Below, piece by piece: positions 11,318 to 50,781 of a stretch of DNA of 64,000 nt. The DNA is taken from the NCBI RefSeq assembly GCF_001447785.1, contig NW_015172148.1:1-64000 (forward strand). The letters run 5' to 3'. Made by a program: the position numbers and the translations under genes. The notes below the pieces were generated by a model, which did no database searches, was not told the DNA's origin, and was given only the letters and a program-made list of their open reading frames with translations. The DNA is from Gekko japonicus (taxonomy: Eukaryota). Numbering within the stretch: the first letter of the stretch is position 1; every line of letters starts with the position of its first letter.

Positions 11318-11420
11318 GGGAATCCGCAGCCTGGAGACTTGATCGAGATTTTTCAGCCTGAATGCCAACATTGGGCCATCTATATAAGCAATGGATATGT
11401 GGTCCACTTGGTTCCACAAG
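11318..11420 (+). CDS. PLAAT/HRASLS-family module A, His-His exon ([34 protein letters not shown])
   Basis: Acceptor tttgcag and donor gtaatg; 103 bp, phase 0 to 1; PGDLIE..HWAIY..GYVVHL motif carrying both catalytic His residues of LRAT-like NlpC/P60 enzymes. Confidence 0.9.
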
Positions 11421-12647
11421 GTAATGATTTCTTTGCTTTACAACAGAGAGCAAGATATATGTCTAAGGACCTTTCCAGATGTCCCTTATCAAGGCCCTTT
11501 CTGCACTGTCATTTCCCTCACATTCACCCTGCATATCTCCAGTCGTTTGTTTTTTTGTTCTGCACTCCTCCGCACTCTCACCGAGCATTCCATTTGTATT
11601 CTCTTTCTCATTCTGCACTGACTCCCCCCCCCCTTTGGTACCCAGATCGCTTTCAGCCTGCATTTACCCTGGGCTTTTCAAGAGTGGTTTTGTGGCAATT
11701 TATATTCTTTGTTCATTTCCAAGCCAGAGCTAATTTAAAAGAAGAAGTCTCCCCATAGATTTTCCCCCATGCCCATTTCCGGTCTCTCCTAGGCCAATCC
11801 CCCCTCCTCATCAGCATCCTTTTCAGCCAGTTCAGGCTCCCCAGAGAGTGCTTGGCAAAAGCAGCCGCTAAAGGCACAGGCGAAGCGGGCTGCCTGGCTG
11901 GCCCTTCCCCTCCATGGCTCCTCCTGCCAGCAGCTTCCCTCTTCCCAAGGGCACTGCAGCAGAAGGAGAAGCCCACCAGCCTCTCCCTGACCCTTCTGCC
12001 ACCTAAACAAAAGTCTGCTAGCTGGCCATTTGTTAGGTTATCTCTCTGGCAAGCCTTTCAGGCCTGGGGAGGGAAGCAGGGAAGATGCAGCCTGCTTGGC
12101 TCTTCCTTGGCTCTTGGGGGAGGGAGGGGAGTCTTCGGTTGCCTCTCCCCCCACCCTGCCTATCTATCTACCCTAAGTGCAATGTAATAACACATGGGGA
12201 ATAGTCCTTATTATTACACCACTCAAGAACCATCCTCTCTTCTTTCAAATATTTTTTTAAAAATGCAAGACACACTGCAGGTGAAATTTATACACAAATT
12301 TATATACAATTCAGGATGTGCTGTGACCAAAATAAGCTGAAATTGTGCTAATTTTTAAATCTACATTTAAACATTTTAATTCATGGAATGTTCTTAGTTA
12401 CCCCTGGATCGTAATTAAATGCATGGAGTATACTTTCATTAACATTTTGGTGTATTTGCACAGAAGTTTTTTTCTACCTTGGCATCCACCTGACATGGGT
12501 TGATTCCACATGGACTTTTTCTCAGTTTCCACAATCCCATATTGCAGGATTTGCTTTGTTTTTTTATTAGAATCATAGAGTTGGAAGGAACCTCTAGGGT
12601 CATCTAGTACAACCCCCTGCATAATGCAGGACATATAGAAATACCTC

Positions 12648-14456
12648 ACCCTCGGTTTCTGGCTTTGGCTCCCTTAATGGCGGCCACGTTTTCCCGGAGC
12701 TCTGGGAGACGTGTGCCTTGAATCAGCAGATGGGAGGGGATGCGATGGTATGCATCCCCCTCAAAGCCCTTGCGTTGGGCTCCTAGCCATGAGGCGCTTG
12801 GATGGTCCTTCCTCCGGCAAACAGCCGGTGAAGGGAGGCCGGTCCCCTGCCCTGATGGTCCCGCTGCTGATTTCCATAAATGGACACAGGGACGCATACC
12901 AGGACAAGCGCTTGGTGGCCAGGCGAGTGATTGTGAAAGGCAAGCTCTACGCTGAAAAGTGAGTGATGGTATAAGCAAAGACACCAGAAACCAAGCTGAA
13001 AGTCCCCCCTTAACCAAATCAGGGGGGGGGAAACTCCCCCTTGAAAGGAAAAAAGCTGAACTGACAAATGAAATATAAGGTGAGGATGGAATATAAAGCT
13101 GTTTTGACTAGAATAAGGAACTTTTGAGAACTTACCAAGCGGCATCAAAGGATTTTGAGACTTTTGTAACTTTTTCTAAAAAGTAAACAACTCTCAAACA
13201 TGGCGCCTCCGAGGAGGGAGGAGAAGGATAAACAACTGAAACTGAGGTTTCCTGCCGGAAATGCCAGCCCAGCAAGTTCTGTCCCTAGACAGGACAATAC
13301 CATAGACTTCCAGAATATGCTGACTGAGGCTTTGCGCCCTCTGCTGGAAAAAATGCAATCGCTTCATGTGAAATTCGATGCACAACAAAACCAGTTAAAT
13401 GAGACGTCTAAAAAAACAGAGAAAGTGGGACAAGAGCTGAAAGAAGTGGATGCCAACACCCAGAAGCTTAAAAACCAAATGCAGGTGATGGGAAAAAAGA
13501 GAGCAACTGATGAGGTTCAACTATTACAGCTGCAAATGGAAAAGGCAAGCTATGTCTTAAGATTCCAGGGAGCTCCTGAATCAAAAGGAGATTTGAAGCA
13601 GATTATTTGTGATGCATTGGGTCTGGTTACAGATTTAAAAGCGGACTTTCTACAAGGCGAAATAATACGATCTATAGATCATACTCTGACTTTATAAGGA
13701 AAAATAATCTGCCCGGCGAGATTGTGGTGAGATTCTCCAGGGGACAAGTGAGAGACCAAATACTGAAAGCAACAAACGGAGCTACCCTGAAAATCAAAGG
13801 CAAAGAAATAAAAGTTTTGAAGAACATTACATTTGAAATAAGGAAGAAGAGAAAGAAATATAGAGACTTGGCACTGTTTTTACAGAAAAACAATGTCCCC
13901 TACAGATGGAATCTCCCTGAAGTCATCCTCTTCAAATTTAAAGACAAGAAAGAAAAAATTGACTTTGTTGTAAAGGCACGTGAATTTCCACAATGACAAG
14001 CCGGCCCAGCAGAGGAAGAGGATAAAGAAAAAGGCAGCAGCAAGGAAAGTGAAGAAGGAGGCCAGGCATCCTCTGATGAGGACTCAGCTTTGGAACTGGG
14101 AGCAGCTGCTCCTAAAACAAGCTATCGACTGAGAAATAAAAAGGACAAAAAATTAGTTATAATTGTTCTCTAGATCCTGTTTTAAACAAACTTTATTTCT
14201 CTTTAGAGATCTTTATATAAATGTTGTTGGAGACTCTAGTACAAGCAAGAAGAAATGTGTACTCACTTAATGTAGCAAAGTATAAGCATTTTTACCTATA
14301 AGTTAATTTTGTAAGCTTTGTAAATGACCACCATCTCTTGGATTTTTAGGTGTTTTGCTTTACTTTCTCCCGTAGTTTGTAGCTTCCCTCCCTTGTTTCT
14401 TTGTAATTTATAGAAAATGCAATAAAAAATCCCCTATGGGGGGCTCAAAAAAAAAA
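12648..14456 (+). mobile_element. ORF1-only L1-derived retroposon (HAL1-like), apparently full length, inserted in a CR1 3' end
   Basis: 11-bp TSD agaaatacctc (12637-12647, 14457-14467); ORF1p-like coiled coil plus LRFQG..E and IVVRF..RD.IL motifs at 13200 to about 14150, with a frameshift and a stop; AATAAA at 14421 and poly(A); no ORF2. Confidence 0.85.
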
Positions 14457-14909
14457 AGAAATACCTCCCACTCCACACCCCCAGTGACCCCTGCTCCATG
14501 GCCAGAAGATGGCCAAAAAACCCCCTCCAGGACCCCAAAGTAGTGATCAGCATTTCCCTGGGCAGGTATGAAAGGACCATGAGAACTAAGCACTGATACA
14601 ACCCTTCCTGCCCTCCCTCTCAGGATCTGCCTAAGTTCACAGAATCAGCATTGCTGTCAGATGGCCATCTAGCCTCTGTATGAAAACCTCCAATGAAGGA
14701 GAGCCCACCACCTCCTGAGGAAGCCTGTTTTACTGAGGAACCACTTTAAGAGTCAGGAAGTTCTTCCTAATGTTTAGCCCAAAACTCTTCTGATTTAATT
14801 TCAACCCATTGGTCTGATTTCAATGAAATGGAATGCCCCTTCTCCCTCCTTCTATATACCCATAAATACTGTTTTATCTGGGCAGCATCATTGTTAGGGT
14901 TGCCACTGG

Positions 14910-15114
14910 CAGTGTTCCCTCTAAGCTGAGATGGAGTGAGCTAGCTCACAGTTGTTTAGCCTCCGGCTCATACATTTTTTCTTAGCTTAGGAAGGATGGC
15001 TCCAGAGCAAACTAATTTATGCTTTAGCCAAATTGCTCACTCACAACTTTAATGCCAGTAGCTCACAAAGTAGAATTTTTGCTCACAAGACTCCACAGCT
15101 TAGAGGGAGCATTG
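14910..15114. mobile_element. hAT-like MITE (TIR cagtgttccctctaagctg)
   Basis: Terminal inverted repeats; same family at 25392-25597 and 41388-41582. Confidence 0.75.
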
Positions 15115-21239: not shown

Positions 21240-22075
21240 TATGTACTGAGATTTTTGATATGGTCCAGATATTGCATTTGTGATCTGCACTGAGCCTGCT
21301 TACGGGGATGGCAGAATGTAAATGTAAATAAATAAATTAAATAAATAAAATCTCTGAAGCCGAGCAGTGTCAGCTTTGTTTAGTACTTGAAAGAGAGACC
21401 ACAGATCCACTACCCAGGATCCCTACCCAGATGCAGGCGTTGGCGAACCACCTTGAAAACCCTGTGGGGTTGCTGTGAGTCGGCTGTAACTCGACTGCAC
21501 TTTATGCACACATCTAAGAATAATTGCGAGACCTCCTTTGGAGAGGAAAGGTGATTCTGATTGTTTGATTAATAAAGACTGTATAAACACTAAAACAATC
21601 AAAGTTTTAAAATCATAGAAGCTATGCTACCAGTTTTGTAGTTCTATGTCAGACAACTAGAAACGACCTTGGATCTAACTTTTCTGGCTGCAAGCACAAA
21701 AAGTGCTACCTTGTGAGTAACCAGGGGATACATGTCTGAGCTTGATTAATAAGAGTAAGAATTTAGAAAGCCAGTGAGGTGTAGTGGTTCAAGCCGTGGT
21801 TAGAGCAGGACATGTGCTGGAAACCTGGGCTCAAATCTGAATTAGCCTTGAAGCCCCCAGTTGACCTTGGCTTAATCTCTCTCTCCCCCCTCCCCTCTCC
21901 CAGCCAAACACCTAAGAGGCTTGTTTGAGTTTTAAATGAGGGAGCGTAGAATCATGCAGTTTGCATGACTGCATGAAGCTCCTTGGAGGAAACAGAAGAC
22001 AAAAATGTGTAGATGGGCTTACTGTTGAAATTCAACCTATTAGATCCAATTTACTCATGTTTCCCTTCCCTCCAG

Positions 22076-22353
22076 GCAACTGTTCAGGATCTGACATCCC
22101 TAGTCTTCTCTCATCTGGCACTTCTGGTCTTGGTTCTGTCATGCATGACCATGCGGAGGTGAAGATGGAACCTCTTTGGAAAGTAGCGGACAATGGGTAC
22201 CAAATCAATAACAAGTATGACGCCAAATACAAACCTCGACATGTGCGTGAGATCATCTTTAAAGCAAAGGCAGCCGTGGGGACAAAGATGTCCTATAACT
22301 TCTGTGAGCATTTTGTCACTAATCTACGTTATGGCATCCCTTTCAGTGACCAG
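22076..22353 (+). CDS. PLAAT module A, catalytic Cys exon (..INNKYD..MSYNFCEHFVTNLRYG..SDQ)
   Basis: Acceptor tccag and donor gtatgt; 278 bp, in frame with the 103-bp exon; NNKYD and CEHFV..LRYG..SDQ motifs. Confidence 0.88.
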
Positions 22354-22910
22354 GTATGTAGACCCTCTTCAGGTATGCATACAAAGTTTGGTTTCTGGCA
22401 ACCGGTGGGAGCTTGGGTGGGAAGGACATGGGGATGTGGCATCCTGTGCTCCATGGCATCACTTCTGGGAAAACACGGAAGTAACATCATGCTGCTCTGG
22501 GAATCTCTGGAAATGCCATTGAGTTTCCTGTTACTCCTAGGGGTATGTGACCTGATTTCTGGGTAAACCAGGAAGTGATGTCATGACAAACACAAAGCTG
22601 TCATTTTTAAAAAAGAAATTCTCCCAGTGGGAAGTCCCTTGCAAACATAATGTACAGACAGTCTCTGCAACTGATATTGAACTTGGGCATAGGGTCCTCT
22701 TGGATGGCTTCCACATGGGGATGTGATTTTGTGGCTTCCCTGTTGCTGGTGCAGCTGCAGATAAAATGCAGCAGCCATGAAGTCTTCCCGTGGCAGGTTT
22801 CCTCACAGTCACCCAACCCCAGTCCCTCAGAAATAGACACCTCATCCACTGGACAACTAGAACTTCTGCAATTAAAAAAAAATCAGCACTAGAATATTGT
22901 TATATTGATA

Positions 22911-23920
22911 CTAGGAATAAGGTTCGTTGTGGAAATAAATACAATGAGCTCTAGAAAGAGGCTCTGGGAGAGTGCCTTTCACACTCAGCGTCAAATTGCT
23001 GTGGCGACCTTAGCAGGGTATAATGACATAGAGTCCATCATTTTCTCCAGAGGAACTGATCTCTGCCATCTGAAGAGCAGTTGTAATTTTGAATGACCTC
23101 CAGCCCTCACCTGGAGATTGGCAACAGTTGTTACCCAGGAGGAAATGGCTGGTTTGGAGAGTGGAGTCTATGACATTGTACCTGTCTGAGGTCCAACCCC
23201 TCCTCAAACCCCACCCTCTCCAGGCTCCACCCCTCAAATCCTCAGGAATTTCCCAACCTGGAGTTGGCAACACCATGTCCTTCCCAGCCCCTTTGACTGC
23301 AGCTGACTTCTACCTTCCGTCCTGGAGATCAGTTGTAATTCTGAGTGATCTCCACCCCTCACCTGGAGATTGGCAACAATGGTTCCCCGGGAGGAAATGG
23401 TTGGTTGGGAGGGTGGGGTTTGTGGCATTGTATCTGTCTGAGGTCCTACCCCGTCTAAAACCTCACCCTCTCCTGGCTCCACCCCGCAAATCTCCAGGAA
23501 TTTCCCAACCTGGAGTTGGCAACTATATCTGCTTCCCAGCCAAGCACCGACCTGTCATTATCTGCCCCTGAATTCAGCTTTTTATCTCCTCCCTCCCTCC
23601 CTCCCTCCCTCCTGGAGATCAGTTGTAATTCTGATTTGTCTCCAACCCCCACTTGGAGATTGGCAACAATGGTTCCCCAGGAGGGAATGGCTGGTTGGGA
23701 GGGTGGAGTCTATGGCATTGTACCTGTCTGAGGTCCCACCCCTCCTCAAACCTCACTCTCTCCAGGTTCCATCCGTCAAATCTCCAGGAATTTTCCATCT
23801 GGAGTTGGCAACCCTATCTCCTTCCCAGCCAAACATCAACCTACCTTTATTTTCCCCTCTTCAGCTTTCCATCTCCCCCCCACACACCTGCAGCCTCTAC
23901 GGTGCTCTGAAACCCTGACC
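22911..23920 (-). mobile_element. Second copy of the same Helitron, with tandemly amplified internal unit of about 250-290 bp
   Basis: Same CTAG end and hairpin as 20306; unit ..gttgtaatt..ggagttggcaac occurs three times. Confidence 0.7.
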
Positions 23921-24468
23921 TCCATGCCGAATCTTCCTATTTGGAGATGGAATCCCCAGTCTTTGGGGGATCCCTGGAAAGTTGGGAACCCAAGGGTCTG
24001 GCCTTTCCTTGCTTCCCTGGGCCACCCCCTCCCTTTGTTATTGTGCAGAGCAGGGGAGAGTATGTTGTCCGAGCACAACACAGATTATTAGCCCAAATAA
24101 AAGAATGGAGCACACACACACTGTAGGAGTAAGCAGACACCATGAACCAACATGGCATAAATCAATAGGGGTTAAACACAATCCTCTTTCTCTACACACA
24201 ATACTCTGTACCTCTGGAGGTTGTAGGCTCAGGATAGGATCTCTCCTTGGACTGGCCTCTGGCTCTGCTTCAGCTTCTCTCTCTTGCCCAAGAGAGCAGG
24301 GAAACTTCCATTCATTCCCCAGTCCAGCCAACTGTGGAGTGGCTAAATTTCTGCTGCCTCCCAGGGACGAAGACCGCCTTGAGACAGTCCCTGTTTTCCT
24401 GCTCTTTTTGGCCTTGCGGTAGCTGGGAACTGTAGTCCAGCAGATGAGGAAGCCCCATTCAACCCAGT

Positions 24469-25100
24469 GGGTGCGTTCAGACGGGGGCTTTCTGCCGGCA
24501 TAAACTGCACCGGTTGGAACCGGTGCAGTTTATGCCGGCAGAAACGCGATCACACTCACCTCTATTTTGCGATTCCCATCGTTGGACGCCCGCTCACACG
24601 CTGCGGGCGTCGGCTTTTTTTTTTAAAAAAAAGCAGTTTGAGCATGCGCATAGGCAGCCATTCAGAGAATGGCGATTTTTGCGCATGCTCAACCCCCCCC
24701 CCCCCGTAAGAGCACAGTAGCCTCCCGGAGGTCCCCGACGCCTCCGAAATGCTGCAGTAAGGGCTTTTTTAAAAAAAACAAACAAACGCTTAGGGCGAAG
24801 CTTCGCCCAAGCGCATACCGCTAGGAGTCTTTTTTAAAATGGCGGGGAAAAGCCGGAAGCCTCAGGCTTCCGACGGAAGTGGCTAGGCACCGGTGGAGAG
24901 CGATCAGACGCCGGTTTGTATCGGAAACCACCGTTGTACTCTGTTTACCACCACTTTGGACCTAGTGGCAGAGTACAACGGTGTAAAAGGATTTACAACG
25001 GTTAGGGACGGGAGGCAGATGTTCGCCGTGTGAACGCTCGTAAGTACACCGGTTGGAACCGGCACCCTAACCGTTGTAAATCCCCCGTCTGAACGCACCC
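24469..25100. mobile_element. PIF/Harbinger-like MITE
   Basis: 19-bp TIR gggtgcgttcagacggggg / cccccgtctgaacgcaccc; 3-bp TSD agt; CpG-rich, so probably young. Confidence 0.8.
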
Positions 25101-25597: not shown

Positions 25598-27977
25598 CTC
25601 TTGAGTGGCGGCTGGGCGGGACTCAGGCAACGCAGCCAGTGGCTAGGGACACGTTCTGAGTGACAGATCATTCAGCCAACTGATTAGGGAGTGTGTGGAA
25701 TGCTCAGGAGAGTCCATGACCAAAACAGAATTATATTATAGAGAGAAGAGATACTATTCTAATTATTGCCATAGCAGGTTCTCTGAATTGCCCGTTTTTA
25801 TTTGTAAAAAAGTCCCTAGCCTTTTCCCTTGCAAAAACCTGCCTGAGCTGAGCCAAGACTGCAGCAGCCAGCTGCAGCATAGGGTTCCCAAGTCTTAGCT
25901 GCGCTGGAGCGGGGGACTCCAGTGCTGCTCTGGGAGTGTGTGTGCGCACGCAAAGTGTGCACACACCGCAACCCCGTCACCCAGAAGTGACACGACCATG
26001 CCAGGCACACTGGAGGCGGGGCCACGACCATCCGGGGGGAAAACATAGAGATTAAATTTTAAATATAATGCAAAATTTATGGTGATAAATACTGATTATT
26101 TCATAGCTATAAAATGTAGCAGGTAATGTAACAGATATAATAAAAAGATACTTATAACCCCTAATTTATATGTTTTTGTGTGTGTTTATATGTTTTTGGG
26201 TGTGTTTGACTGTTTGTGTTTGTTTTATATTGAAAAAAATATTTAACTGCAAAAAAAAAAAAAGACTTCAGGAGCTTTTCCTAGGAATCCCATCCACACC
26301 TAGCTTGACAAGCGAGGGGGGATTGAAACTGGAAAGAACCCCATAGTTAGAGAGAGACAGAAACCTGTTCCAGAATTTCTGTGTTTTACTGAAAGAAAAA
26401 CATTCTGCACAAATTTTCAAGCAAGTAGGAATTTCAGTACTCATCTTATAGAAAGGAAAAGACAAACCAATACTTATAAACAAATAGTGCACTTATTATT
26501 CATTTAGGAATCTATATACTAATAGCCAAGACGCCCGCTCCGTGCGGATATCAAAATCCGTGCATCGGGGGCACTTGGGGGGCAAAAAACATCCTCCCTG
26601 TCAAGGCCTATCTTAATGTTTTGGCTTCCAGGCTGGAACTCAGAAATATAAGCAGTTCTTTTAGAGCAGAGTGCAGGGTGCATTGTCAGGGTGAGAAACC
26701 TCCTGCAAAGCCTTATGGGAGAGAACCAAATAGAGAGGCCTAAGCCAATTCAGGCTGCTGTACAGAACTTGCTTATCTTGCTTATCATTCTGCCACATCC
26801 CAAACTGGTTTGGTTTGGCAGAGGGGCTGGCTTCAGTTTCAGGAGACGTCCCGAACCTGAACTAGGTTTTCCCAGTTTGTACCCATCCCTATACAGATAC
26901 TCTAGTTCTCTGGCTCCCAGTAGCCCTGTTCCATCAGCACTCATGGGCACTCATTACCCAAAGTGGTGATCTAGTTAATTGGAGGAAATTAGCCTGATCA
27001 GAGACACAGCGAGAGGTGGGTAACTGGGATCGCCACTAATATGTACCAAAATCTTTTCCTTAGGGAACTCTCAAAATAAACTAGTCTGGTGTTCAGCTGT
27101 GTGATGGAACGGGCCTGCTCCGACTTACAGACCCCGTTCTGCCAGCCCCCTCCTTGGCTTGCGCCAATTCCTGGAAGATGCTATTCCACTTCCTTCCACT
27201 AGGGTATGTTGCCACCACTGTCCTGTTGGGGTCTTCCTGCCAGGAGAGACAGACTCTTAACTCCCCTTCTCAGACTGATGCCCTGCCTCTGGTCTCCTGC
27301 TACCCAGCGCCTGGTTACCACAGGGATCAACTTCCTTCTTTGGGGCTGGGGGACCTGGAGGTTTGGCAATGAGTGCCTTGACTGCTTGCCTTCCCCCTTC
27401 CCAGGACTCCCCTCTTAAAGTAGCATGGTCTAAGGCTGTTGGAGGAACTATATGGTCCAGAGAACACTACTAGCCTCAAAGAGTAAAATATTTAACTGCA
27501 GTTAAATGAGTGGTTTACTGCAGTTATTTATATCTCTGGGATTTACCACATACTAGTAAACTTACTGATTCAAATAACAAAACAACAAGTATTAATAAAT
27601 CAATAGTATTAATAAAATTATTGGATTTTTTAATATTCTGTAGTATAATAACCTGATAAATGTACACTTACGTTGAAATTGGCCCTTAAAACAAATTAAC
27701 TTAACGCCTGTGGTATAAGAAGTAGTTAGGCCTGGCACCTCTGTCTTGGTTGGCTGATGGAGATCAGAAGGTGCTGGATCATGTGCTCTCTGAGATGCAA
27801 GAGACATCCTAGGTCACCTCAATGTGTCGCCTCCAAAAGAACAGGTAGCATCCCTTGCTCTCTCTCTTCCAGATATAGAAGACACAGGCCGCCTTGGAAC
27901 TTTCCCCAGTTCTGTCTGTATAGCCAGGATGACCATGTAGTTAAAACATGTCCCAAGGCTTCTATTTGCTTTTGCAG

Positions 27978-28080
27978 GTGAATCCACAACCTGGAGACTT
28001 GATCGAGATTTCCCGGACTGCTTGCCAACATTGGGCCATCTATGCAGGCAACGGATATGTGGTCCACTTGGTTCCAACAG
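27978..28080 (+). CDS. PLAAT module B, His-His exon ([34 protein letters not shown])
   Basis: Acceptor tttgcag and donor gtaacg; 103 bp; paralog of 11318-11420. Confidence 0.92.
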
Positions 28081-28573
28081 GTAACGACTTCTTTGCTACA
28101 CAAGGAAGAGCAAGATATATGTCTAAGTACCTTTCCAGAAGGCTTGGCCCTCACCTTCACCCTGCATATCTCCAGTCGCCTTTTTTTTGTTCTGCACTCC
28201 TCCGCATTCTCACCGACCATTCCATTCACATTCTCTGTCTTGTTCTGCATTGATGTGCCCCCCTTCAGCGCCCAGATCGCTTTCAGCTTGCACTTACCCC
28301 AGGGTTTTCAAGAGTGATTGTGTGGCAATTTATATCCTTTGTTGGCTTCCAAGCTGAAGCTAATTTAAGAAACAGAAGTCTCCCCATGGATCTTCCCACC
28401 CCCCACCCATTTCTGGTCCCACCTAGGCCAATCTCCCCTCTTCATCAGCATCCTTATTTGCTTTTATTTGCTTTTATTCACTCTCCAGTAAGTGCTTGGC
28501 TAAAGGCATGGGCAAAGCAGGCTGTCTAGCTGGCCCCACTCCTGCAGCTGCCCCGAGCAGTGCTGCAGCAAAA

Positions 28574-28613
28574 GGAGAAGGAGAAGGAGAAGGAGAAGGA
28601 GAAGGAGAAGGAG
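28574..28613. repeat. (GGAGAA)n microsatellite, tail of a minus-strand SINE
   Basis: Direct reading; runs into the N gap. Confidence 0.9.
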
Positions 28614-28868
28614 NNNNNNNNNNNNNNNNNNNNNNNNNNNNNNNNNNNNNNNNNNNNNNNNNNNNNNNNNNNNNNNNNNNNNNNNNNNNNNNNNNNNNNN
28701 NNNNNNNNNNNNNNNNNNNNNNNNNNNNNNNNNNNNNNNNNNNNNNNNNNNNNNNNNNNNNNNNNNNNNNNNNNNNNNNNNNNNNNNNNNNNNNNNNNNN
28801 NNNNNNNNNNNNNNNNNNNNNNNNNNNNNNNNNNNNNNNNNNNNNNNNNNNNNNNNNNNNNNNNNNNN
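28614..28868. other. Assembly gap (255 N)
   Basis: Run of N. Confidence 1.
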
Positions 28869-30115
28869 TCCCCACAACAGACACCCTGTGAGGTAGGTGG
28901 GGCTGAGAGAACTCTTGACAGAAACTGCTCTTTTTCAAGAACAGCTGTGCCAGAGTTATGGCTTGCCCAAGGTCATCCAGCCAGGTGCAAGTGGAGGAGT
29001 GGGGAATCAAACCTGGTTCTCCCAGATTAGAGTCCGCGCACTTAACCATCCCACCAACTTCTCCCTGATCCCTCTGCCACCTAAACAAAAGTCCACCGGC
29101 TGGCCGCTTGCTAAGTTATCTCTCTGGCAAGCCTTTCAGGCCCAGGGAGGAGAGCAGGGAAGACGCAGCCTGCCTGGTTCTTCCTCAGGTGTCAGGGGAG
29201 GGAGGGGCTCCGGTTGCTCCTCCCACCACCCCTGCCTATCTGTCTACCCTAAATGCAATGTAGTAGCACATGGGGAATAGTCCTAATTATTCCATATCTC
29301 AAGAACCATCCTATCTTCAAAATATTTAAAGAAATGCAAGATACACAGCAATTGAAATTTATACACAAATTTACATACATTTCCGGATGTGCTGTGGCCA
29401 AAATAAACTGAAATTGTGCTAATTTTTAAACCTACTTTTAAGCATTTGAATTCATGGAATGATCTTAGTTACCACAGCCTCTTAATCAAAGGCATGGAGT
29501 ATACTTTCATTAACATTTTGGTGTATCCTCACATAGGTTTTCCTCTACCTTGGCTTCCAGTTACAGCATCCACATGACATGGGTTGATTCCACATGGACT
29601 TTTTACTCAGTTTCCACAATCACATATTGTGGGATTTGTTTTGTTTTTTTATTAGAATCATAGAATCATAGAGTTCGAAGGGACCTCCAGGGTCATCTAG
29701 TCCAATCCCCTGCAGAATGCAGGAAATAGCCAAATATCACCCCCACACCCCCAGTGCCCCCTGCTCCATGCCCAGAAGATGGCCAAAAAAATATCTACCA
29801 GCCCTCCAGGATCCCTGGCCAAACTGGCCTGGAGAAAAATTGCTTCCTGACCCCAAAGTGGTAATCAGCATTTCCCTGCCTTGTCCTCTTTTACTGGAAG
29901 CTGCAGCTGGCCATCTTTGAGCGAACAGATCACAACTGTAAGGGGGGCACTGGCTTGAACACTCTGCCAACAGCCTCCTGTTCCCAGGAAGAGTTCACCA
30001 TGTGTACACTGCTGTCCTGGCCTGGAAAAAATTGCTATACAAAAATGTATAGATGGGCTTACTGTCGAAATTGAACCTATTAGATCCAATTTACTCATGT
30101 TTCCCTCCCCTCCAG

Positions 30116-30429
30116 GCAACCCTTCAGGATCTGACATCCCCAGTCTTCTCTCATCTGGCATCTCTATTCTTGGCTCATATGGCACTTCTGATCTTCGTTC
30201 TGTCATGCATGACCATGCGGAGGTGAAGATGGAACCTCTTTGGAAAGTAGTGGAGAATCGGTACCAAATCAATAACAAGTATGACACCAAATACAAACCT
30301 CGCCCTGTGCGTGAGATCGTCTCTAAAGCAAAGGCAGCCGTGGGGACAAAGATGCCCTATAACGTCCTCAATAACAACTGTGAGCATTTTGTCACTAATC
30401 TACGTTATGGCAAACCTGTCAGTGACCAG
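30116..30429 (+). CDS. PLAAT module B, catalytic Cys exon (..YNVLNNNCEHFVTNLRYGKPVSDQ)
   Basis: Acceptor tccag and donor gtatgt; 314 bp; intact NCEHF motif. Confidence 0.92.
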
Positions 30430-40643: not shown

Positions 40644-41679
40644 CGATGACGACGATGATGATAAAAAGTTGGCAAGCCCGTGTGCGCACTTTCCTAGGCA
40701 TCACCACCACCTGGGGTACGGACACATGGTTAATGTTTGGGGGGAATGGGCTTAGGAAAGCGGATTGGCAGACTGGAAGTGGAACCTCTGTGGCGCTTCC
40801 CTTTGAGGTGCTCCTTCCCTAAACTCCGAGCTGCTATGGCTAATAGCAAGACTGAGTTTTCACCGCTCCCGGCTGTGCAAACGGCTTTTCCCTGTTCAGG
40901 GTTTGCAAACAACACCAAGAGGGTTCCCTCAAGTGAAACAGAAAGAAAAATCCACACCCATTTTCAGGCAGGATTTTTGCAGGGCATTGCTGGTTTCCAG
41001 ACACCTCCACAGTGGAGCTTCTTTGCTCCTTTCGAGGATGGTGACCTCCTTTGCCAACTTGCTGTGAGAGCCAACACAATGGGCAGTTGCATGTTTTCAG
41101 ATTAATGAGAGGTGCACTCCCAGCTCCTCAAAGGCTTGAACCTTCAGGGCACCGTGCTTGCACAGATGTTGGTTGGCTGCCTTAAAACAAAATCTGCATG
41201 CACAGGTACTCTCTGAAGAGCCTGTGCAACTGAGCAAAGTGCTTTGTACTGGCTATCTTTAAAGCAGAAATTCCCAGACTGAGTTGTCCAAAATTCACTC
41301 ACTTTTGAAAACCACTTAATCCAGTTTGTGTATTATATAACATCTATTATGCTTGTCAAGGTTGATGATTGGACCTTTAGATCCAACCAGTGTACCCTCT
41401 AAACTGAGTTAGTGTGAGCTAGTTCATTGGTTTTTTAGCCACCGGCTCACACAGGAAGAATGGCTTCAGCCTCCAGAGCAAACTAATTGATGCAGTGGCC
41501 AAATTGCTCGCTCACAACTTTAATGCCAGCAGCTCACCAAGTAGAATTTTTGCTCACAAGACTCCACAGCTTAGAGGGAGCACCTTCTTTGTGTGGTCTG
41601 GCGAGCAAAGTGTTGCAGTAACTGCATAATCCTGATCTTACTAATTGTCTAAAGTATGAATTTTTGAAACACCCTTTAA

Positions 41680-42427: not shown

Positions 42428-45400
42428 TGAAAAGTACTCAGAAACGTGGAGTGATTTCAGCAAGAGTACTTTATTTAGTGAAGAACAAGACAAGGATTCC
42501 CGGCACGCAGGCCGGTATATATGTCCAGAGACCCACCACCAGAACACACCCCCTAGTGACCCTATAGGTTATTTACAGTGGCCGAGAGTCCCATTGGCTC
42601 TCGGCCGCGGACCTGGCCCTCTGGTTGGGTGCGGGCTAGGATCCGCTCCGCTATTGTTCTGTAGGTACGAAGCTATGGGCTTGTGCTTGACCGCATGGCC
42701 CAACGGTCGCGCACGTGGTAATGGCGGATACATTACACCCCTCCCCCCATAGTCCAGACTATCCACACACGAAGTCCTGGAGGTACGTTGGGGGTTTCCG
42801 AGTCCTTGTGGAGCGGCGCGGCTCCGGAGCGCCGGCCGGATTCATCTCGGGAGCCCGGGGCGGAGAGGTTGGTTGTGGCATTGGTGGGGGCTGCTCAGGA
42901 GGCTCCGGATTGGCCTGGCCGGTAACCGCGTATGGGCGCTCCAGGTCCACGGGATCGTCCGAGAGGACCCGGCGCCGCAGCTGGTCGATGTGGCGGTGGA
43001 GCAGTTGACCATCCTCACAGGATACCTCGTATGATCGAGGCCCTCGCACCCGTACCACACGCGCTGGGATCCAGGGCGGGCCCTGGGCATAGTTCTTTGC
43101 GTAAACTGGGTCTTCCGGGAAGAACCCCCTGGCGGCAGCGTGTGATTCCGTCGTCGGCTCCACCTCGGGTGCCCTGTCTGGGTGCAGGCGATCCAGCCGG
43201 GATGTTAGGCGACGACTCATCAAGAGTTCCGCCGGACTGAGGCCCGTCTCAGTGTGCGGGGTTGTATGTTGGCCGAACAGGAACACCGCCAGCTTGTAGT
43301 CCCAGTCCTTGCCGTCGAACTTCCGCAGGGCTTCCTTGGTCGTGCGCACCATCCGCTCCGCCTGGCTGTTGGTTGCTGGGTGAAAGGGCGCTGATCGGAC
43401 GTGGCGAATTCCGCAGTACCTTGTGAAGTCCTGGAACTCGCTGGAGGTGAAGGCCGTACCGTTATCGGTTACCAGGGTATCCGGGAGGCCGTGAGAGCTG
43501 AAAATGTGTCTCATCGCCTTGATGGCCGCCTTGGAGGTGGATGGCACCGGCACTACTTCCAGCCATTTGCTGTACGCATCCACTAGGATAAAAAAGATTT
43601 GTCCCTGGAAGGGCCCCGCGAAATCCAGGTGCAGGCGTGACCAGGGTTTGTGGGAGGATTCCCAAGCCCTTTCCGGTGCCCGGGGCGGGGACGGCCGAAA
43701 AGCCTGACAGGGTTGGCAGAGCTTTACCTGCTTCTCGATGTCCTGGTCCAGCCCTGGCCACCACACGTAGCTCCGCGCCAGTGCTTTCATCCTCACCACG
43801 CCCGGGTGTGCCTCGTGTAGTGCTTCCAGCACCCGGTCTCGTAGGGGCGGAGGGATCACCACCCGGCCTCCCCACATCACGCAACCCTTGTGAGTCGATA
43901 GTTCATCTTTGCGGTTTGCGTAGGCCGTGAATTCAGGCCCTGCCGTGACCACCGGCCACCCCCTTCTCACCCAGTCCAGGACGCGGCAAAGGGTTGGGTC
44001 ACGGGCCGTGCGACGGGCCACTTCCTTCACGTGGACAGGTTGGTCTGGGAGGGTCTCCAGAAGGGCGATCTGATAAGCTGGGGCCGGGTCTGGTTCCGTC
44101 GAAGGCAGGGGCAGGTGGCTCAGGGCGTCGGCGTGTCCCATCGCCTTCCCGGGATGGTGGACGAGTGAATAGGTGTACCCGGCCAGGAACACGGACCAAC
44201 GGATCACCCTCGGCGAGGTCATCTGGGGGGTCTGGCGGTCCGGGGCAAGTAGACCCAAGAGAGGCTTATGGTCCGTAAGGACCGTGAAAGGCCGGCCGTA
44301 GAGGTAATGGTGAAATTTTTTCACCCCGGCTACGATCGCAAGAGCCTCTTTATCAATCTGCGCGTAATTGCGCTCCGCTGATGACAGAGTACGGGAGTAA
44401 TAAGCCACGGGGACTTCCCGACCGTCAGCCAGCTTGTGCCCCAGGACTGCCCCGACCCCATACGGAGAGGTGTCGCAGGCCAGCACCACCGGCAGGTCCT
44501 CGTTGAAGTGAGCGAGGACCGAGTTGGATGTGAGGAGATCCTTGACCGCCTGGAACGCCGCCTGTTGAGCTGGGCCCCAGACCCACAGCACGTCCTTGTC
44601 GAGGAGCCGGTGGAGGGACTCCGCTACCGCTGCTTTGAGGGGAAGAAAAGAGTGGTAGAAATTAAGGAGGCCTAGGAAGGCCTGCAGTTCAGTCTTTGAG
44701 GAGGGGGCTGGAGCGTTCGAGATCGCCACCGTCTTTTCCGTCGTCGGGTGGATGCCTTGTGCGTCGACCTCGAACCCGAGGAACTCCACCTTGTGAACGC
44801 CGAGCTGACATTTTTCGCGCTTCACTTTTAGCCCTGCGTGATCGAAGCGTTGCAGGACTGCGCGGAGACGGTCGGTAAAGGACGCGGCATCGGGGGCGGC
44901 GATCAGGACGTCATCTAAAAAGGGTTGGACTCCAGGGATCCCTTTGAGGAGAGAGTCCATGAAAGATTGGAAAATCCCCGGGGCCACCGAAACCCCGAAC
45001 TGGAGGCGGTGGACCCTGAAAGCCCCCCTGTGTGTGGCGATCGTCTGAGCTTCTGCGGTGGCGGCGTCCACCAGCAGCTGCTGGTAGGCTTGCGCCAAGT
45101 CCAGCTTCCCAAAAATGCGAGCCCCCGCGAGTGCTGCCAACACATGGCTGACCACCGGTACTGGGTACGCGTGGTCCTGCAGTGCTTTGTTTAACGTGCA
45201 GTTGTAGTCCGCACAAATCCGAACATCCCCGTTGGGCTTAACCGGGGTGACTATGGGCGTTTCCCAGCGTGCAGACGCCACCGGTTCCAGTACTCTTTGG
45301 GCCACTAGCTTATCGAGTTCCGCCTCTATTTTGGGCCTCATCGTTATAGGCGGGTTCCTGGCCTTGATCCATATGGGGCGGACTGTAGGGTCCAGGTCCA

Positions 45401-47253
45401 GGGAGATGGGGGCCCCTGTGAATTTGCCTAGGGACCCATCAAAAACCCGGGGAAATTCATTACACACCGCCATGAAGTCCACCTTTTGTAGTTGGTGGAT
45501 CCCCCCAATAGTCAATCCCAGGGGCTTGAACCACGACATACCCAGGAGGCTTGAAAGCCGGCCCCCCACCACCAATATGTCCAAATATCCGTTAAAATCC
45601 TGAAACTCCACCTTGAATTTGCCCCAGCCCCGTATAGCCACTGGATTCTTATTAAAATCCTGTAGTTTAAATTGTGGCTTTCGCAGAGGGGGCCCCCCTC
45701 CGGGACAGAGCCTCTGCAGGGTGTCCTCTGAAATTATAGTTAACTCGGAGCCGGTATCCAGCTCCATGCTACAGAGGGACCCCTCAATACGGACCGAAAC
45801 GTGGATTTTGTTTCGGCCGTCTCGGAGCATTTCACCTACCTGGGGCTGGGGCTTCTTGGAGACCGTGTGTAGGTCGATGGAGTGTAGGTCAACGGTGTGG
45901 ATGGGCTCAGTCAGATGTACCGGTCTCCTGCCTTGCTGGCGGCGGCCGCGGCAAACCTTGGCAATGTGTCCCTGTTTATTGCACGCCCGGCAGGTGGCGT
46001 CTCAGAAACGGCAGGTCCGGCGCTCATGCGCTTCTCCGCAGCTTGCACAATGTAGAGCGGGCTCCGAAGACCTCACCGGCTGGGCTCCTCTAGATCGATG
46101 CGATTGCGAGGGCTTGTGCTGGAGTTGTTGAACTTCATCCTCCTCCGAGTCGGCTGACTCTGCCTGGGATTGGGTGCGATGGACCTGGATGCGGTCGGGG
46201 TGTGCCGTTTCGTAGGCCGCTGCGGCCTTTAGGGCTTTGGCCACCGTAAGGTCGTCTTCCCTGATCAGGCGTCTTCTCAGCTTTGTATCCCGCAGACCCA
46301 CGAGGAACTGGGTCAACAATGTGTCCTCCAGGCTGGGGAACTCACATAGCGTGGCGGCCTGCCGAAGGTTGGCCAGGAAATCCGCTGCCTTCTCCCCCGG
46401 TGTTTGGACTTTTGCGCAAAAGTCCATGCGCGCAGCGTACTTGGTCGGTTTGGGAGCCAGATGGGCCGTGAGGGACTCGATGAGGGCGTCGAAGGTTTCC
46501 TCCTCGACCTCCTTGGGAGAAATCAGGCCCCGCAACAGCAGGAGGGTGTCCATGCCGCACAGGCGTATAAGGTGGGCCCTCTTTGTTTCCGCGTCGGTAA
46601 CCCTCAAGCATGTTAGGTAATTCTTCAGGATCATTACCCACGTGGTCCATCTCTCGGGGTGTGCCAAGTCGAAGGCCGCGATACCCTCGTGGAAGGTCCC
46701 AGCGGCGGCGGCGGCTCCCGAGGATGAGGCATTGGATGCAGTAGACATTCCGACGTTTGCGCTTGTTTGCTTTACACTTGTGAGCTCCGGGAGTTTGCGG
46801 AAAATGGCGCTTGTGGCAGAGTCGAGCGGGCTGCAAGGCGGCGTGGTGAAGGGCGAGTTGGTCGCGAAGTTCGGGTGGCGAGACGAGCGGTTTCCGTGCT
46901 CAGCGTTGGGGAAGCGTGGTGAACGGCGTGGCGCTACGTGGCCGAGGTTTGACGGAGCGAGGTGTTGAGCGATGGAGCGATGATCCCGGCGGCGGCAGGC
47001 GGCTGTGGTGGTGATCGGTGCTCGGTGCTGCAGGGTCTCCTCCGGGTCTCACCACCAGAACACACCCCCTAGTGACCCTATAGGTTATTTACAGTGGCCG
47101 AGAGTCCCATTGGCTCTCGGCCGCGGACCTGGCCCTCTGGTTGGGTGCGGGCTAGGATCCGCTCCGCTATTGTTCTGTAGGTACGAAGCTATGGGCTTGT
47201 GCTTGACCGCATGGCCCAACGGTCGCGCACGTGGTAATGGCGGATACATTACA
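42428..47253 (-). mobile_element. Very young Gypsy LTR element with near-intact gag-pol
   Basis: TSD gttcc; 3' LTR 42428-42737; 5' LTR remnant 47051-47253 identical to its counterpart. Confidence 0.95.
42759..46748 (-). CDS. Gypsy gag-pol polyprotein (Gag, protease LDTGS, RT FLDD, RNase H, integrase HHCC/DDE) with one in-frame TGA at 46002-46004
   Basis: ORFs 46002-46748 and 42759-45830 are in the same frame; the intervening frame reads CRF*DATCRACNKQGHIAKVC. Confidence 0.9.
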
Positions 47254-47880: not shown

Positions 47881-48815
47881 TCCTAAACTTAGCTTACTTG
47901 CCAAACCACTCCCCACTCTGTTCCGAGGCCAGCAAAGGCCCAGGAGTGAGGCCTTGGCCATCACCAGCTCTGTTCACCAGCACATTTGAAGAGCTGGCAT
48001 CCTCCACTCTCCAGGAGTGCCGCATAACAAAGCTTTTATTGTACTGAGTTTTACAGTGGAAATGGATAATTACCAATTGGAGAGATTTCATTTTCAGCAT
48101 CAAATTTCAGCAAAATTCAACTGTGGCACTGTTCAGGGAATGGAAACACCAGCATAAATAGGAATTGACATTTTGGAATAGGAATTGGTATTTGTTTCTA
48201 CTCCAAAAGTTCAATTCATTTTCATTATTCTGTTACAGCCATTCTTGGTTCCAGGGCTTCAGTAGAAAGATTTGGATGTGATTTTTTTCCATCCAACATG
48301 GGTAACTTCAGCAATGGTACTTCCTCATCTAAAGGATCTTCTCAGCCACACTTCAGACAGACTGAAGAAAGGGTTACAGTTTAGACAAAATGTATGACCA
48401 CTAAAAGCAAAGTGCAGAGAAACTATGACCTCCCCCCCCTTGCTGCTTATTCCTATTTGTTTTTATTAACAAACATAACAGATGGGGTCCTTTGGGGGGG
48501 GTCCTTTTTTATTAATGTGGAAATAAATGCATATCCACAATGAAAACCCCCAAGAGCCAATGGGCTGTAGTAGTTAAGAGCGGCAGACTCTAATCTTGAT
48601 AACCAGGTTTGATTCCCCCCTCCTCCACATAAAGCCAGCTGGGTGACCTTGGGTCCGTCACAGCTCTTTCAGAGTTCTCTCACCCCCATCTACCACACAG
48701 GGTGTCTGTTGTTGGAAGAGGAAGGGAAGGTGATTGTATGCTACTTTGAGATTCCTTAAAGCAGAGAAAACTGAGGTATAAAAAACCAATTCTTCTTCTT
48801 TTTTGTTCCCTGCAG

Positions 48816-48965
48816 GCTGACTCGAAAAAGTTTTCAGTAACTACCGTATGCGCTGCCATATGCACTGCGGCCTTTTACGCCAATCCCATAGGCACTGTTG
48901 CTGTAGCTGGTAGCGCACTTCTGCTACATAATTTCTGGAGAAGAAGACAGCATGAACATGAGTGA
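48816..48965 (+). CDS. PLAAT last coding exon, copy a (ADSKKFSVTTVCAAICTAAFYANPIGTVAVAGSALLLHNFWRRRQHEHE*)
   Basis: Polypyrimidine tract plus tgcag acceptor, phase 0; hydrophobic segment then basic RRR and a stop, as in PLAAT membrane anchors; AATAAA at 49123. Confidence 0.75.
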   Translation, partial: ADSKKFSVTTVCAAICTAAFYANPIGTVAVAGSALLLHNFWRRRQHEHE

Positions 48966-49265
48966 CATCCACACCAAGAGGCAAACTAGGTCTTTAAGGC
49001 AGACACTGAACCAGAGGCTTCTGCAGGCAGATTCGTATCCTCGCTCATTCACCCCACCCCCACATTCTATAGCTTTGTCTTGTAATTGCAGCTTTCTAGC
49101 TAATAGTTCTTTGCAGTGCTGGAATAAAACCCCGAGAGGCATGCAGTGTCATCCCAAGCAGAGTGATACCCTTCTGATCAGTCCGTTGAAGCCAATGGGC
49201 ATAGAAAATAGTAGCTCTTCTATGGATGGAATTATTAATGTTTCAGCCCTCTTTCTGTAAGAATC

Positions 49266-49450
49266 CAGGGTTATTTTTGGGCAGGAACGCACAGGAACGG
49301 AGTTCCGGCTGGCTCCCAAGTTGGCCACGCCCAGCAGGAACTCATTAGCATAATAGGCCACACCCAACAGCAGAAACTCATTAGGATTGGCTACATTGGG
49401 GGTGTGTGGCCTAACATGCAAAGGAGTTTCTGCTACAAAAAAAGGCCCTG
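49266..49450. mobile_element. hAT-like MITE; inverted copy at about 61251-61436
   Basis: cagggttatttt / aaaaggccctg termini; ggccacacccc subrepeats. Confidence 0.6.
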
Positions 49451-50631
49451 GGTTTTGACAACAAACAAGGTAAACAGAATAACAAGCAAAAGGTGGAGAA
49501 TAACTTTATACCTTCACCCAAGGGACGATTCATATGTTACAAAGACATCTTCTAGAATTCCACGTCTCCCAGGTACACATCGGCCCAGTTTGGATAAACA
49601 CTATGGTGCTTGGAGAAAGGGCATAAGTTTTGACCCCGCATACCAGTTTCCCAAGTTGAAATAGACCTGGGGAGCCACTATACACCACCCCTGAGGAATT
49701 TGCTCATAAATGATCAGGGAATTGGGGGTGAGCAAAATAGTGGCAAAGTTTGTGGATGATACCAAATTATTGAGGTGGGTGACCAGGCAACAACATGACA
49801 AGTGGGGCTCAATACTGCTAAACATATGTCAGGAGAGAAGCCATCTTAGAGGAAAATTCCAGCTAAAGCTCTCATCTTCTGGCAATCTGACTTTTTGCAG
49901 GTGTCAGCCAATCCCCTGCCTGACTGATGGGTTACTTGTCAAAGTAATCTCAAGAGCCTGTTTATTAGTCCACACATTTCAGCATGAATCTGATATGGGA
50001 AGAGAGAGCTCACTCTCGCCCCAGAAAGTTCCATCGAGACAGCCCTGTAATTGGTTGAGAAGGTCAGGAGGTTATGGCCAGCAGTATCTATATTATGGAC
50101 TAAAGCAGAGAGAGAGAGTATATTCCCTTCCTATTCCCTTCCTATTCCCTTTCCTCCATCCACCACCATGTTGTTTGTTTGAAGGTACTTTGTGTAAGCT
50201 CTGGAACATCATGCTTCAGCTGTAGCAACCAGCAGTGCTGCCTTTAGCATAAATAGCACAGCTGTTAGCCTTCTGTTATTTTAGATGCATTATGACTCCA
50301 CTGAACTATATAACTTTTTTCTAAATTTCTTTAATGAAGCTTTTTAACTTCATTTTCATGTAAGTTACCAGGGAGTGACTTGAACTTACTTGTGTTTAAC
50401 TTTGGTTACAGTACCACACCAAAGCAAGGCTAGCTTTGACAACATCCATCTCGAAGGGTGGGATAAAAATGTTTAAAATAAATAAATGCAAGGAGACCCA
50501 CACTGAAACAAAGGATCACAACTTTAAATGTGTGCTCATGGGTCTGAACAAGTGGAGACCGAGAGGGAAAGTTAAAGCAGAGAAAACTGAGGTATAAAAA
50601 ACCAATTCTTCTTCTTTTTTGTTCCCTGCAG

Positions 50632-50781
50632 GCTGACTCGAAAAAGTTTTCAGTAACTACCGTATGCGCTGCCATATGCACTGCTGCCTTTTATGCCAAT
50701 CCCATAGGCACTGTTGTTGTAGCCGGTAGCGCACTTCTGCTACGTGATCTCTGGAGAAGAAGACAGCATGAACATGAGTGA
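50632..50781 (+). CDS. PLAAT last coding exon, copy b (ADSKKFSVTTVCAAICTAAFYANPIGTVVVAGSALLLRDLWRRRQHEHE*)
   Basis: Tandem duplicate of 48816-48965 with acceptor, reading frame and AATAAA (50939) intact. Confidence 0.7.
   Translation, partial: ADSKKFSVTTVCAAICTAAFYANPIGTVVVAGSALLLRDLWRRRQHEHE

What the first reader, a model, noticed from the sequence alone, without database searches (positions are those of the whole stretch)
11318..50781. Modular PLAAT locus: two catalytic cassettes, two alternative membrane tails, and a possible tandem double-LRAT-domain enzyme
Seen: module A has intact exons and splice sites, but I find no homolog of the last exon between 22354 and module B. A's Cys exon ends in phase 0; B's His exon and both last exons start in phase 0. 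Known: canonical PLAAT1-4 have one LRAT domain plus a C-terminal hydrophobic anchor. Inference: splicing could give A+tail, B+tail, or A+B+tail (two catalytic domains on one anchor), each with tail a or b. This would be a variable-cassette architecture in a lipid-remodelling family linked to antiviral responses.
Basis: partly seen in the sequence, partly recalled or inferred. Interest (0 to 1): 0.85.

Follow-up and report, generated by a model that had tools for sequence, protein, structure and literature searches.

The report
Gecko PLAAT gene with duplicated catalytic domain
This is one Gekko japonicus phospholipase (PLAAT-family) gene in which the two exons encoding the catalytic domain were duplicated in frame, so ordinary splicing gives a two-domain enzyme on one membrane tail; NCBI already predicts this protein, and similar multi-domain predictions are common in other vertebrates.

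Summary
The sequence observation holds. Two His+Cys exon pairs (A and B) and two tail exons have canonical splice sites and compatible phases. No tail homolog lies between A and B.

The locus is one gene, not a set of cassettes:
- The only ATG exon (MFWMPE, 6974-6991) lies upstream of A, outside the finding.
- B sits in a copy of A's intron 1 and has no start exon of its own.
- The A+B+tail-a product is exactly NCBI's predicted Gekko japonicus protein LOC107118668 (321 aa).

RNA-like contigs show a His exon, most likely His-A, spliced onto Cys-A. Their break points imply that Cys-B is expressed in the same runs. The A-to-B junction was neither seen nor excluded, and nothing supports alternative cassette use.

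Domain A is eroding. It lost four residues, including the Asn of NCEHF, and changed conserved R, G and P. Its branch is 2.6 times longer than B's, and omega is about 0.8-1.

Tail b is a roughly 96% identical tandem copy with its own AATAAA.

Multi-LRAT predicted proteins are widespread, including a conserved ~300-aa double-LRAT gene across squamates. I found no paper describing them.

The N gap lies inside B's intron and both flanks are collinear with A.

The parts
6974..6991 (+). Coding part of exon 1 (MFWMPE), followed by donor gtaagt. It is the only start-codon exon of the gene and lies outside the finding's coordinates.
   Evidence: exact match to the first six residues of P0001. Paralogs start MSWxPE. 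Donor.
9297..12651 (+). Duplicated block, copy A: part of intron 1, the His-A exon and the start of the next intron. Homologous to 26585-29742.
   Evidence: 80-88% identity in four collinear pieces.
11318..11420 (+). His-A exon (103 nt, phase 0 to 1). Encodes His24 and His36 of the predicted protein.
22076..22353 (+). Cys-A exon (278 nt, phase 1 to 0). The Cys117 codon is at 22303-22305. A 12-nt deletion just before it turns NCEHF into FCEHF.
   Evidence: RNA-like contigs cover 22074-22289 and are joined to a His exon.
26585..29742 (+). Duplicated block, copy B: a copy of A's intron-1 sequence, the His-B exon and the following intron. It holds no usable start exon.
27978..28080 (+). His-B exon (103 nt, phase 0 to 1). 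Encodes His151 and His163.
28614..28868 (.). Assembly gap (N) inside the His-B/Cys-B intron, between an (AAGGAG)n run and a SINE-like copy.
   Evidence: Flanks are collinear with module A. Not filled.
30116..30429 (+). Cys-B exon (314 nt, phase 1 to 0). The Cys256 codon is at 30379-30381, the NCEHF motif is intact, and a 24-nt insertion lies in the Ser-rich linker.
48816..48965 (+). Tail exon a: 49 codons plus the stop, moderately hydrophobic. It is the tail used in the NCBI model. AATAAA at 49123.
50632..50781 (+). Tail exon b: a tandem duplicate with an identical acceptor and 4 amino-acid differences. AATAAA at 50939.

Best explanation
The window carries one PLAAT-family gene, Gekko japonicus LOC107118668. 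A genomic segment running from mid-intron 1 to just past the Cys exon was duplicated in tandem. The His+Cys exon pair is phase-symmetric (0 to 0; 381 nt in A, 417 nt in B). Including all exons in order therefore gives an open 321-aa protein: MFWMPE, LRAT domain A, LRAT domain B and one C-terminal hydrophobic tail (a).

Domain B keeps every family motif and is probably the working phospholipase/acyltransferase next to the anchor. Domain A keeps its His-His-Cys residues. It has lost the four residues before the Cys, including the family's Asn, and has changed conserved residues. It is most likely a weakened or inactive passenger domain whose reading frame is kept open because B lies downstream in the same ORF.

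Tail b is a younger tandem copy of the terminal exon with its own poly(A) signal. It is probably redundant or a minor alternative last exon.

Shown here: the exon anatomy, the duplication, the single start exon, the match to the database protein, Cys-A spliced to a His exon that reads as His-A, and co-expression of Cys-B. Inferred: the A-to-B splice in real mRNA, the loss of activity in A, and the use of tail a over tail b.
For: - P0001 (NCBI LOC107118668) equals exon 1 + A + B + tail a at 100% identity.
- Only one ATG exon with a donor exists, at 6974. The B block is homologous to A's intron 1, and its exon-1-like 18-mer has no donor and is closed by a stop.
- All splice sites are canonical and A's and B's are nearly identical.
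- Reads: in runs X1 and X2, from two studies, contigs cover Cys-A from its acceptor. There is no depth in the unique flanking intron. The contigs continue upstream into His-exon sequence. The laid piece starts at 28023, exactly where the A and B His exons become identical, so I read it as His-A cross-mapped on His-B.
- The contig ends (22162; 22157-22289) fall exactly on 31-mers shared by A and B, so B's Cys exon must be in the same runs. By my depth arithmetic A and B are roughly equal.
- These runs hold about 0.2 of the words of 27900-30500. B's exons make up 0.156 of those words and 31-mers shared with A and other parts of the window only 0.017.
- A is relaxed: omega 0.83 (1.03 in the Cys exon); 10 derived changes in A against 6 in B, and A's fall on conserved R, G and P; branch length 0.16 against 0.062.
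- AlphaFold2 folds both domains with pLDDT of about 85-98 in the cores.
- Parallel case: the conserved squamate double-LRAT gene also has a faster, motif-eroded first domain.
Against: - The 22353-to-27978 junction was not among the listed joints (31 joints were not shown). No contig was laid on the last 47 nt of Cys-A, and His-B carried only the 43-nt cross-mapped piece. The tool warns that its human-likeness filter makes such holes meaningless, so this neither supports nor refutes the junction.
- The evidence behind the Gnomon model is unknown to me.
- An intact ORF in A is only weak evidence of selection. The chance of no stop arising is 0.41-0.54 for the observed divergence.
- The tail is only borderline hydrophobic (best 19-aa Kyte-Doolittle mean 1.46-1.59).
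Confidence: 0.6

Rival explanations
1. Variable-cassette gene. Exon 1 is spliced to A or to B, mutually exclusively or by regulated skipping. This gives single-domain A+tail and B+tail enzymes, each with tail a or b, with A+B as at most a minor form.
For: All combinations are in frame. A and B are both expressed in the same runs. Both tails have identical acceptors and their own AATAAA.
Against: Identical strong splice sites give no obvious basis for exclusion. No single-module isoform of this gene is in the protein databases, although 182-aa and 194-aa products were within the length range searched. A's erosion at conserved sites argues against a stand-alone A enzyme under selection. The three NCBI isoforms of the Pogona three-module gene are all 488-492 aa, and the X1 sequence holds all three modules.
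Confidence: 0.15
2. B-only gene with a decaying upstream pseudo-module. The functional product is exon 1 + B + tail, or starts at the intronic in-frame ATG at 27948. A-containing transcripts would be splicing noise on the way to exon loss.
For: A lost the conserved Asn plus three residues, changed conserved R, G and P, and has omega near 1. B has an in-frame ATG at 27948 that A lacks.
Against: Cys-A spliced to a His exon that reads as His-A is present at contig depths of 15-19, similar to my estimate for B. All four of A's splice sites are intact and its only deletion is in frame.
Confidence: 0.17
3. Assembly artefact. The A/B or tail a/b duplication would come from collapsed or expanded haplotypes, or from a wrong scaffold join at the N gap.
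For: There is an N gap inside module B. Tails a and b are about 96% identical. A 182-bp repeat at 100% identity lies elsewhere in the window.
Against: A and B differ by 12-20% in non-coding DNA and by separate transposon insertions, far beyond allelic divergence. A-specific contigs occur in the RNA runs and break exactly at the A/B shared words, and the runs hold more of the B stretch's words than A could supply. The gap flanks are collinear with A.
Confidence: 0.03

Closest known systems
Human PLAAT2/3/4 (HRASLS2, PLA2G16, RARRES3); solved structures 2LKT, 4DOT, 4DPZ, 7ZOM
   Same: Same LRAT/NlpC-P60 fold family (E = 2e-31 to 5e-28). Same His-His-Cys residues, the NCEHF motif in domain B, the same split into a His exon, a Cys exon and a tail exon, and a C-terminal hydrophobic tail.
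   Different: These proteins have one LRAT domain. Here there are two in tandem before a single tail. The linker is Ser-rich, the tail is less hydrophobic, and domain A lacks the Asn of NCEHF.
Conserved squamate double-LRAT proteins of about 300 aa, annotated 'PLAAT3-like' or 'PLAAT5-like' (Heteronotia binoei P0028, Rhineura floridana P0193, Sceloporus undulatus P0190, Liasis olivaceus P0196, Gekko kuhli P0206)
   Same: Same architecture: LRAT, LRAT, one hydrophobic tail. The first domain evolves faster and has eroded motifs (NSEHF in Sceloporus; NCEN in the snake and gecko members), while the second stays NCEHF.
   Different: This is a different and much older gene, 36-38% identical. Its first and second domains are each orthologous across squamates. 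The Gekko japonicus A/B pair is a separate, younger duplication in which the two domains are sisters (99/94 support).
Other predicted multi-LRAT proteins: Pogona vitticeps LOC110070699 (three modules), Leucoraja erinacea 'PLAAT5-like' (two plus a tail), Myotis and Molossus bats, flatfishes, passerine birds
   Same: In-frame tandem repeats of the same domain. In the ones I inspected (skate, Pogona) the copies cluster within the species.
   Different: The duplications I placed on the tree (skate, Pogona) are independent. Some models may be gene-prediction fusions of tandem genes. None is characterised in the literature I could search.
HRASLS3/LRAT chimera domain-swapped homodimer (PDB 4Q95; Golczak et al. 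2015, as reviewed in PMC5133064)
   Same: It shows that two LRAT-family catalytic domains can work as a pair, with the Cys helix contributing to the partner's active site. That is a possible model for a covalent tandem.
   Different: It is a non-covalent dimer that depends on the LRAT-specific insert, which this protein lacks. No pairing of A and B was tested here.

Membership tests
PLAAT / H-RAS-like suppressor subfamily of the LRAT family (Pfam PF04970) | LRAT domain match above Pfam's gathering score | tested here: met
   each exon alone scores 37-73 bits against a cutoff of 24.3. PLAAT4, PLAAT3 and PLAAT2 structures match at E = 2e-31 to 5e-28.
PLAAT / H-RAS-like suppressor subfamily of the LRAT family (Pfam PF04970) | Catalytic His, His and Cys in the conserved positions (His23, His35 and Cys113 in human PLAAT3, numbering from my own knowledge) | tested here: met
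   Domain A: H24, H36, C117. Domain B: H151, H163, C256.
PLAAT / H-RAS-like suppressor subfamily of the LRAT family (Pfam PF04970) | NCEHF motif around the catalytic Cys | tested here: inconclusive
   Met in domain B (NNNCEHF). Not met in domain A, where a 12-nt deletion leaves FCEHF. All nine aligned relatives have N before the Cys.
PLAAT / H-RAS-like suppressor subfamily of the LRAT family (Pfam PF04970) | C-terminal hydrophobic membrane anchor | tested here: inconclusive
   The tail exon sits where relatives have theirs and ends in a basic cluster like theirs. The best 19-aa Kyte-Doolittle mean is only 1.46-1.59. AlphaFold2 predicts helices 271-294 and 299-320 at pLDDT of about 61-65.
PLAAT / H-RAS-like suppressor subfamily of the LRAT family (Pfam PF04970) | Phospholipase A1/2 or acyltransferase activity | not testable with these tools
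   Needs an enzyme assay.
Expressed tandem double-LRAT protein (one mRNA with both modules) | A single transcription unit: one start exon, none for module B | tested here: met
   the ATG exon with a donor occurs only at 6974, and the B block is a copy of A's intron 1.
Expressed tandem double-LRAT protein (one mRNA with both modules) | Cys-A to His-B splice junction (22353 to 27978) present in RNA | tested here: inconclusive
not among the listed joints. The exon ends concerned have holes that the tool attributes to its filter.
Expressed tandem double-LRAT protein (one mRNA with both modules) | Both modules transcribed and spliced | tested here: met
   One search shows a His exon that reads as His-A joined to Cys-A. 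One search shows contig ends at A/B shared 31-mers, and one search gives a word share of about 0.2, so B's exons are present.

The most novel reading that the evidence does not exclude
Tandem-LRAT PLAATs would be a real, recurrently evolved protein class. Examples are this gecko gene, the old squamate double-LRAT gene, and the bat, flatfish, bird and skate arrays. In this class the anchor-proximal domain stays catalytic. The upstream domain would become a pseudo-enzyme that regulates, targets or decoys, for instance in lipid remodelling linked to virus defence. This Gekko locus would be a young snapshot of that transition.
Probability: 0.2. Interest if true: 0.6.

Novelty: new variant of a known kind. 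Interest (0 to 1): 0.35.

Why it matters
PLAAT enzymes remodel membranes. From my own knowledge and PMC10760033, they are involved in lens organelle clearance, N-acyl-PE synthesis and picornavirus entry, and they are described as single-domain, tail-anchored proteins.

This locus shows cleanly how a phase-symmetric exon pair can be duplicated to make a two-domain version. Database searches show the same outcome arose many times and was kept for a very long time in squamates, yet I found no paper on it.

The practical value is modest. The gene model is already public, the alternative-cassette idea has no support, and the extra domain looks degenerate. It would make a good test case for asking what an extra, decaying LRAT domain does to a PLAAT.

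Tried and rejected
- **B-specific start exon.** The 18-mer at 9328 and 26616 (MFWLPG) resembles exon 1. It has no GT donor, is closed by a stop after 10-11 codons, and its flanks do not align with 6974. Rejected as a functional exon.
- **Tail homolog between A and B.** None found.
- **Transcript-derived Gekko peptides spanning the junctions.** Two further protein searches found none. All three searches are now used.
- **The joint '28065 goes back to 22074'.** I considered a back-splice or a mis-ordered assembly. I rejected both in favour of His-A cross-mapping on His-B. Both contigs' laid pieces are 43 nt and start at 28023, where A/B identity begins.
- **ORF intactness of A as proof of selection.** Too weak; P(no stop) is 0.41-0.54.
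- **Literature on tandem LRAT domains.** Nothing found.
- **The search of earlier findings by words.** No hit.
- **Joining exons.** The joined product was used only as database protein P0001, by id.
Full report
**Where we are.** The window is Gekko japonicus. A protein search with the Cys-A reading frame returned NCBI 'PREDICTED: uncharacterized protein LOC107118668 [Gekko japonicus]' (P0001, 321 aa) at 100% identity, from an 84,985-bp scaffold. P0001 reads MFWMPE, then domain A, domain B and tail a. tblastn places these pieces at 6974-6991, 11318-11420, 22076-22353, 27978-28080, 30116-30429 and 48816-48965. The joined product was handled only as database protein P0001.

**Checking the observation.**
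- Every His and Cys exon alone passes Pfam LRAT.
- All eleven splice sites are canonical, and A's and B's are nearly identical.
- Self-comparison shows the duplication: 9297-12651 plus 21999-22429 against 26585-29742 plus 30039-30500 at 80-88% identity, and the tail region 48756-49241 against 50572-51055 at 95.9%.
- No tail homolog lies in 22354-27977.
- The N gap (28614-28868) is inside B's intron, in an (AAGGAG)n expansion next to a SINE-like copy. Both flanks continue collinearly with module A, so it does not touch any exon. Continuity across it is unproven, and I left it unfilled.

**One gene, one start.**
- The only ATG exon with a donor is at 6974-6991. Gecko paralogs begin MSWxPE, so it is a conserved first coding exon.
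- The B block begins as a copy of A's intron 1. An 18-nt look-alike of exon 1 sits 31 nt inside both blocks, but it has no donor and is closed by a stop.
- B can therefore enter an mRNA only by splicing from exon 1 or from Cys-A, unless an unknown internal promoter uses the in-frame ATG at 27948.
- With strong, near-identical splice sites, including all exons is the default. Because the exon pair is phase-symmetric, that product is open.

**RNA evidence (one call allowed, 22066-28065).**
- In runs X1 and X2, from two studies, contigs cover Cys-A from 22074. There is no depth in the unique intron bins on either side, so these runs behave as RNA.
- One contig per run continues upstream into His-exon sequence. 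The tool laid that part on His-B as a 'goes back' joint. In both runs the laid piece is 43 nt and starts at 28023, exactly where the A and B His exons become identical after a divergent stretch. I read it as His-A spliced to Cys-A.
- The contig ends (22162; 22157-22289) coincide to the base with 31-mers shared by A and B. A k=31 assembly does this only if B's Cys exon is in the same run.
- My arithmetic on the bin depths leaves about 1800-1970 depth-bases for the 54-nt shared segment. That is about 33-37x against 15-19x for A alone, so A and B appear roughly equimolar. This is an inference.
- The index shares of about 0.2 for 27900-30500 fit B's exons, which are 0.156 of the words. They cannot come from A, because 31-mers shared with A and other parts of the window make up only 0.017.
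- The decisive 22353-27978 joint is not among the 15 joints shown; 31 more were hidden. No contig is laid on the last 47 nt of Cys-A or on His-B proper. The tool states that its human-likeness filter removes conserved pieces and that holes prove nothing.
- Net result: A is transcribed and spliced, and B's Cys exon is co-expressed. The A-to-B junction is untested.

**State of the two domains.**
- Relative to B and to nine relatives, A lacks four residues immediately before the catalytic Cys, so NCEHF becomes FCEHF.
- The 24-nt difference in the linker is an insertion in B.
- Of 16 polarisable differences, 10 are derived in A. They include conserved R to Q, G to S and P to H. Six are derived in B, at variable sites.
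- Pairwise omega is 0.83 overall and 1.03 in the Cys exon.
- In a domain tree A and B are sisters (99/94 support), with branch lengths of 0.16 and 0.062.
- Both keep His-His-Cys, and AlphaFold2 folds both domains confidently (mean pLDDT 79.8).
- Non-coding divergence of K = 0.14-0.19 suggests an age of tens of millions of years, using a rate from my own knowledge. A's open frame over that time is only weak evidence of constraint.
- The pattern of amino-acid drift with a preserved frame and preserved splice sites is what one expects of an upstream passenger domain in the same ORF as B.

**Tails.** Tails a and b differ by 7 of 147 nt (4 amino acids, omega 0.41). They have identical acceptors, and each has AATAAA 161 nt past its stop. 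Exon identity equals flank identity, so nothing shows separate constraint. The proximal tail a is the one in the NCBI model.

**Context.**
- A full HMMER scan with the Cys-B exon lists dozens of predicted proteins with 2-8 LRAT stretches. They come from halibut, plaice, Myotis and Molossus bats, Pogona, Thamnophis and skate.
- A search with P0001 adds passerine birds and many lizards.
- Among these is a conserved ~300-aa double-LRAT protein present in geckos, an amphisbaenian, iguanians, lacertids and snakes. Its first and second domains are each orthologous across species, so that architecture is old and maintained. Its first domain is also the faster and motif-eroded one.
- A Logan contig of unknown organism encodes a degenerate half-domain followed by a full LRAT domain and a tail (P0213).
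- I found no paper describing tandem LRAT domains. PMC10760033 reports loss of plaat1 in squamates but does not treat these genes.

**Verdict.**
- The double-domain reading is the default and is already annotated.
- The variable-cassette reading is unsupported.
- Module A is probably a decaying or non-catalytic domain.

Noticed in passing
window 42534-47253 (minus strand): A Ty3/gypsy-type LTR retrotransposon sits inside the gene's last intron. Its 204-nt terminal repeats are 100% identical (42534-42737 and 47050-47253). It has an open 1023-aa pol (RVT_1, RNase H, integrase) and a 248-aa gag-like ORF. It looks like a very young insertion.
   Followed up: partly
window 30522-34282: An older LTR element has 383-nt repeats at 97.9% identity (30522-30904 and 33900-34282). 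A minus-strand ORF at 30933-31910 carries Tf2-type SH3 and chromodomain matches. The 18-kb last intron is largely nested retroelements.
   Followed up: partly
window 58014-58283 and 59364-59513 (minus strand): Two copies of a degenerate LRAT Cys-type exon (NCKH instead of NCEH, about 40% identity to relatives) lie on the opposite strand. They sit within a 182-bp repeat that is 100% identical (58107-58288 and 59337-59518). This is either a PLAAT pseudogene remnant or an assembly duplication.
   Followed up: no
window 9328-9345 and 26616-26633: An 18-nt look-alike of exon 1 (MFWLPG against MFWMPE) lies 31 nt inside both duplicated blocks. It has no donor and the frame closes after 10-11 codons. 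It is either chance or a relic of an older exon 1.
   Followed up: partly
window 27948-27977: An in-frame ATG lies 30 nt upstream of His-B in the intron, preceded by a stop. The homologous place in A reads TTG. It could start a B-only protein from an internal promoter, if one exists.
   Followed up: no
window 25390-25600 and 22866-23919: A SINE-like element (with copies at 14909-15114 and 41388-41582) and a block of about 250-290-bp tandem repeats draw very high RNA depth, up to about 380,000 in contig word depth. This makes the A-B interval unreadable for transcript ends.
   Followed up: no
database proteins P0028, P0193, P0190, P0196, P0206, P0248: A conserved squamate double-LRAT gene of about 300 aa starts MN[DE]EEQNHSAFF. 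Its first domain shows Cys to Ser in Sceloporus and CEH to CEN in snakes and geckos, while the second domain is invariant NCEHF. I found no paper describing it.
   Followed up: partly
P0030 (Gekko kuhli) against window 48900-48960: The G. kuhli model joins its Cys exon to a different reading frame of the tail exon (HFCYISSGEEDSMNM...). That frame is closed upstream in G. japonicus. It is either an annotation difference or a frame change between the species.
   Followed up: no
same scaffold, outside the window: A second PLAAT gene, 'HRAS-like suppressor 3, partial' (P0040, 130 aa, 60% identical to the Cys-B exon query), is annotated on the same 84,985-bp scaffold. A close relative of it (P0002) found no further LRAT locus in this window, so I infer it lies outside.
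   Followed up: no
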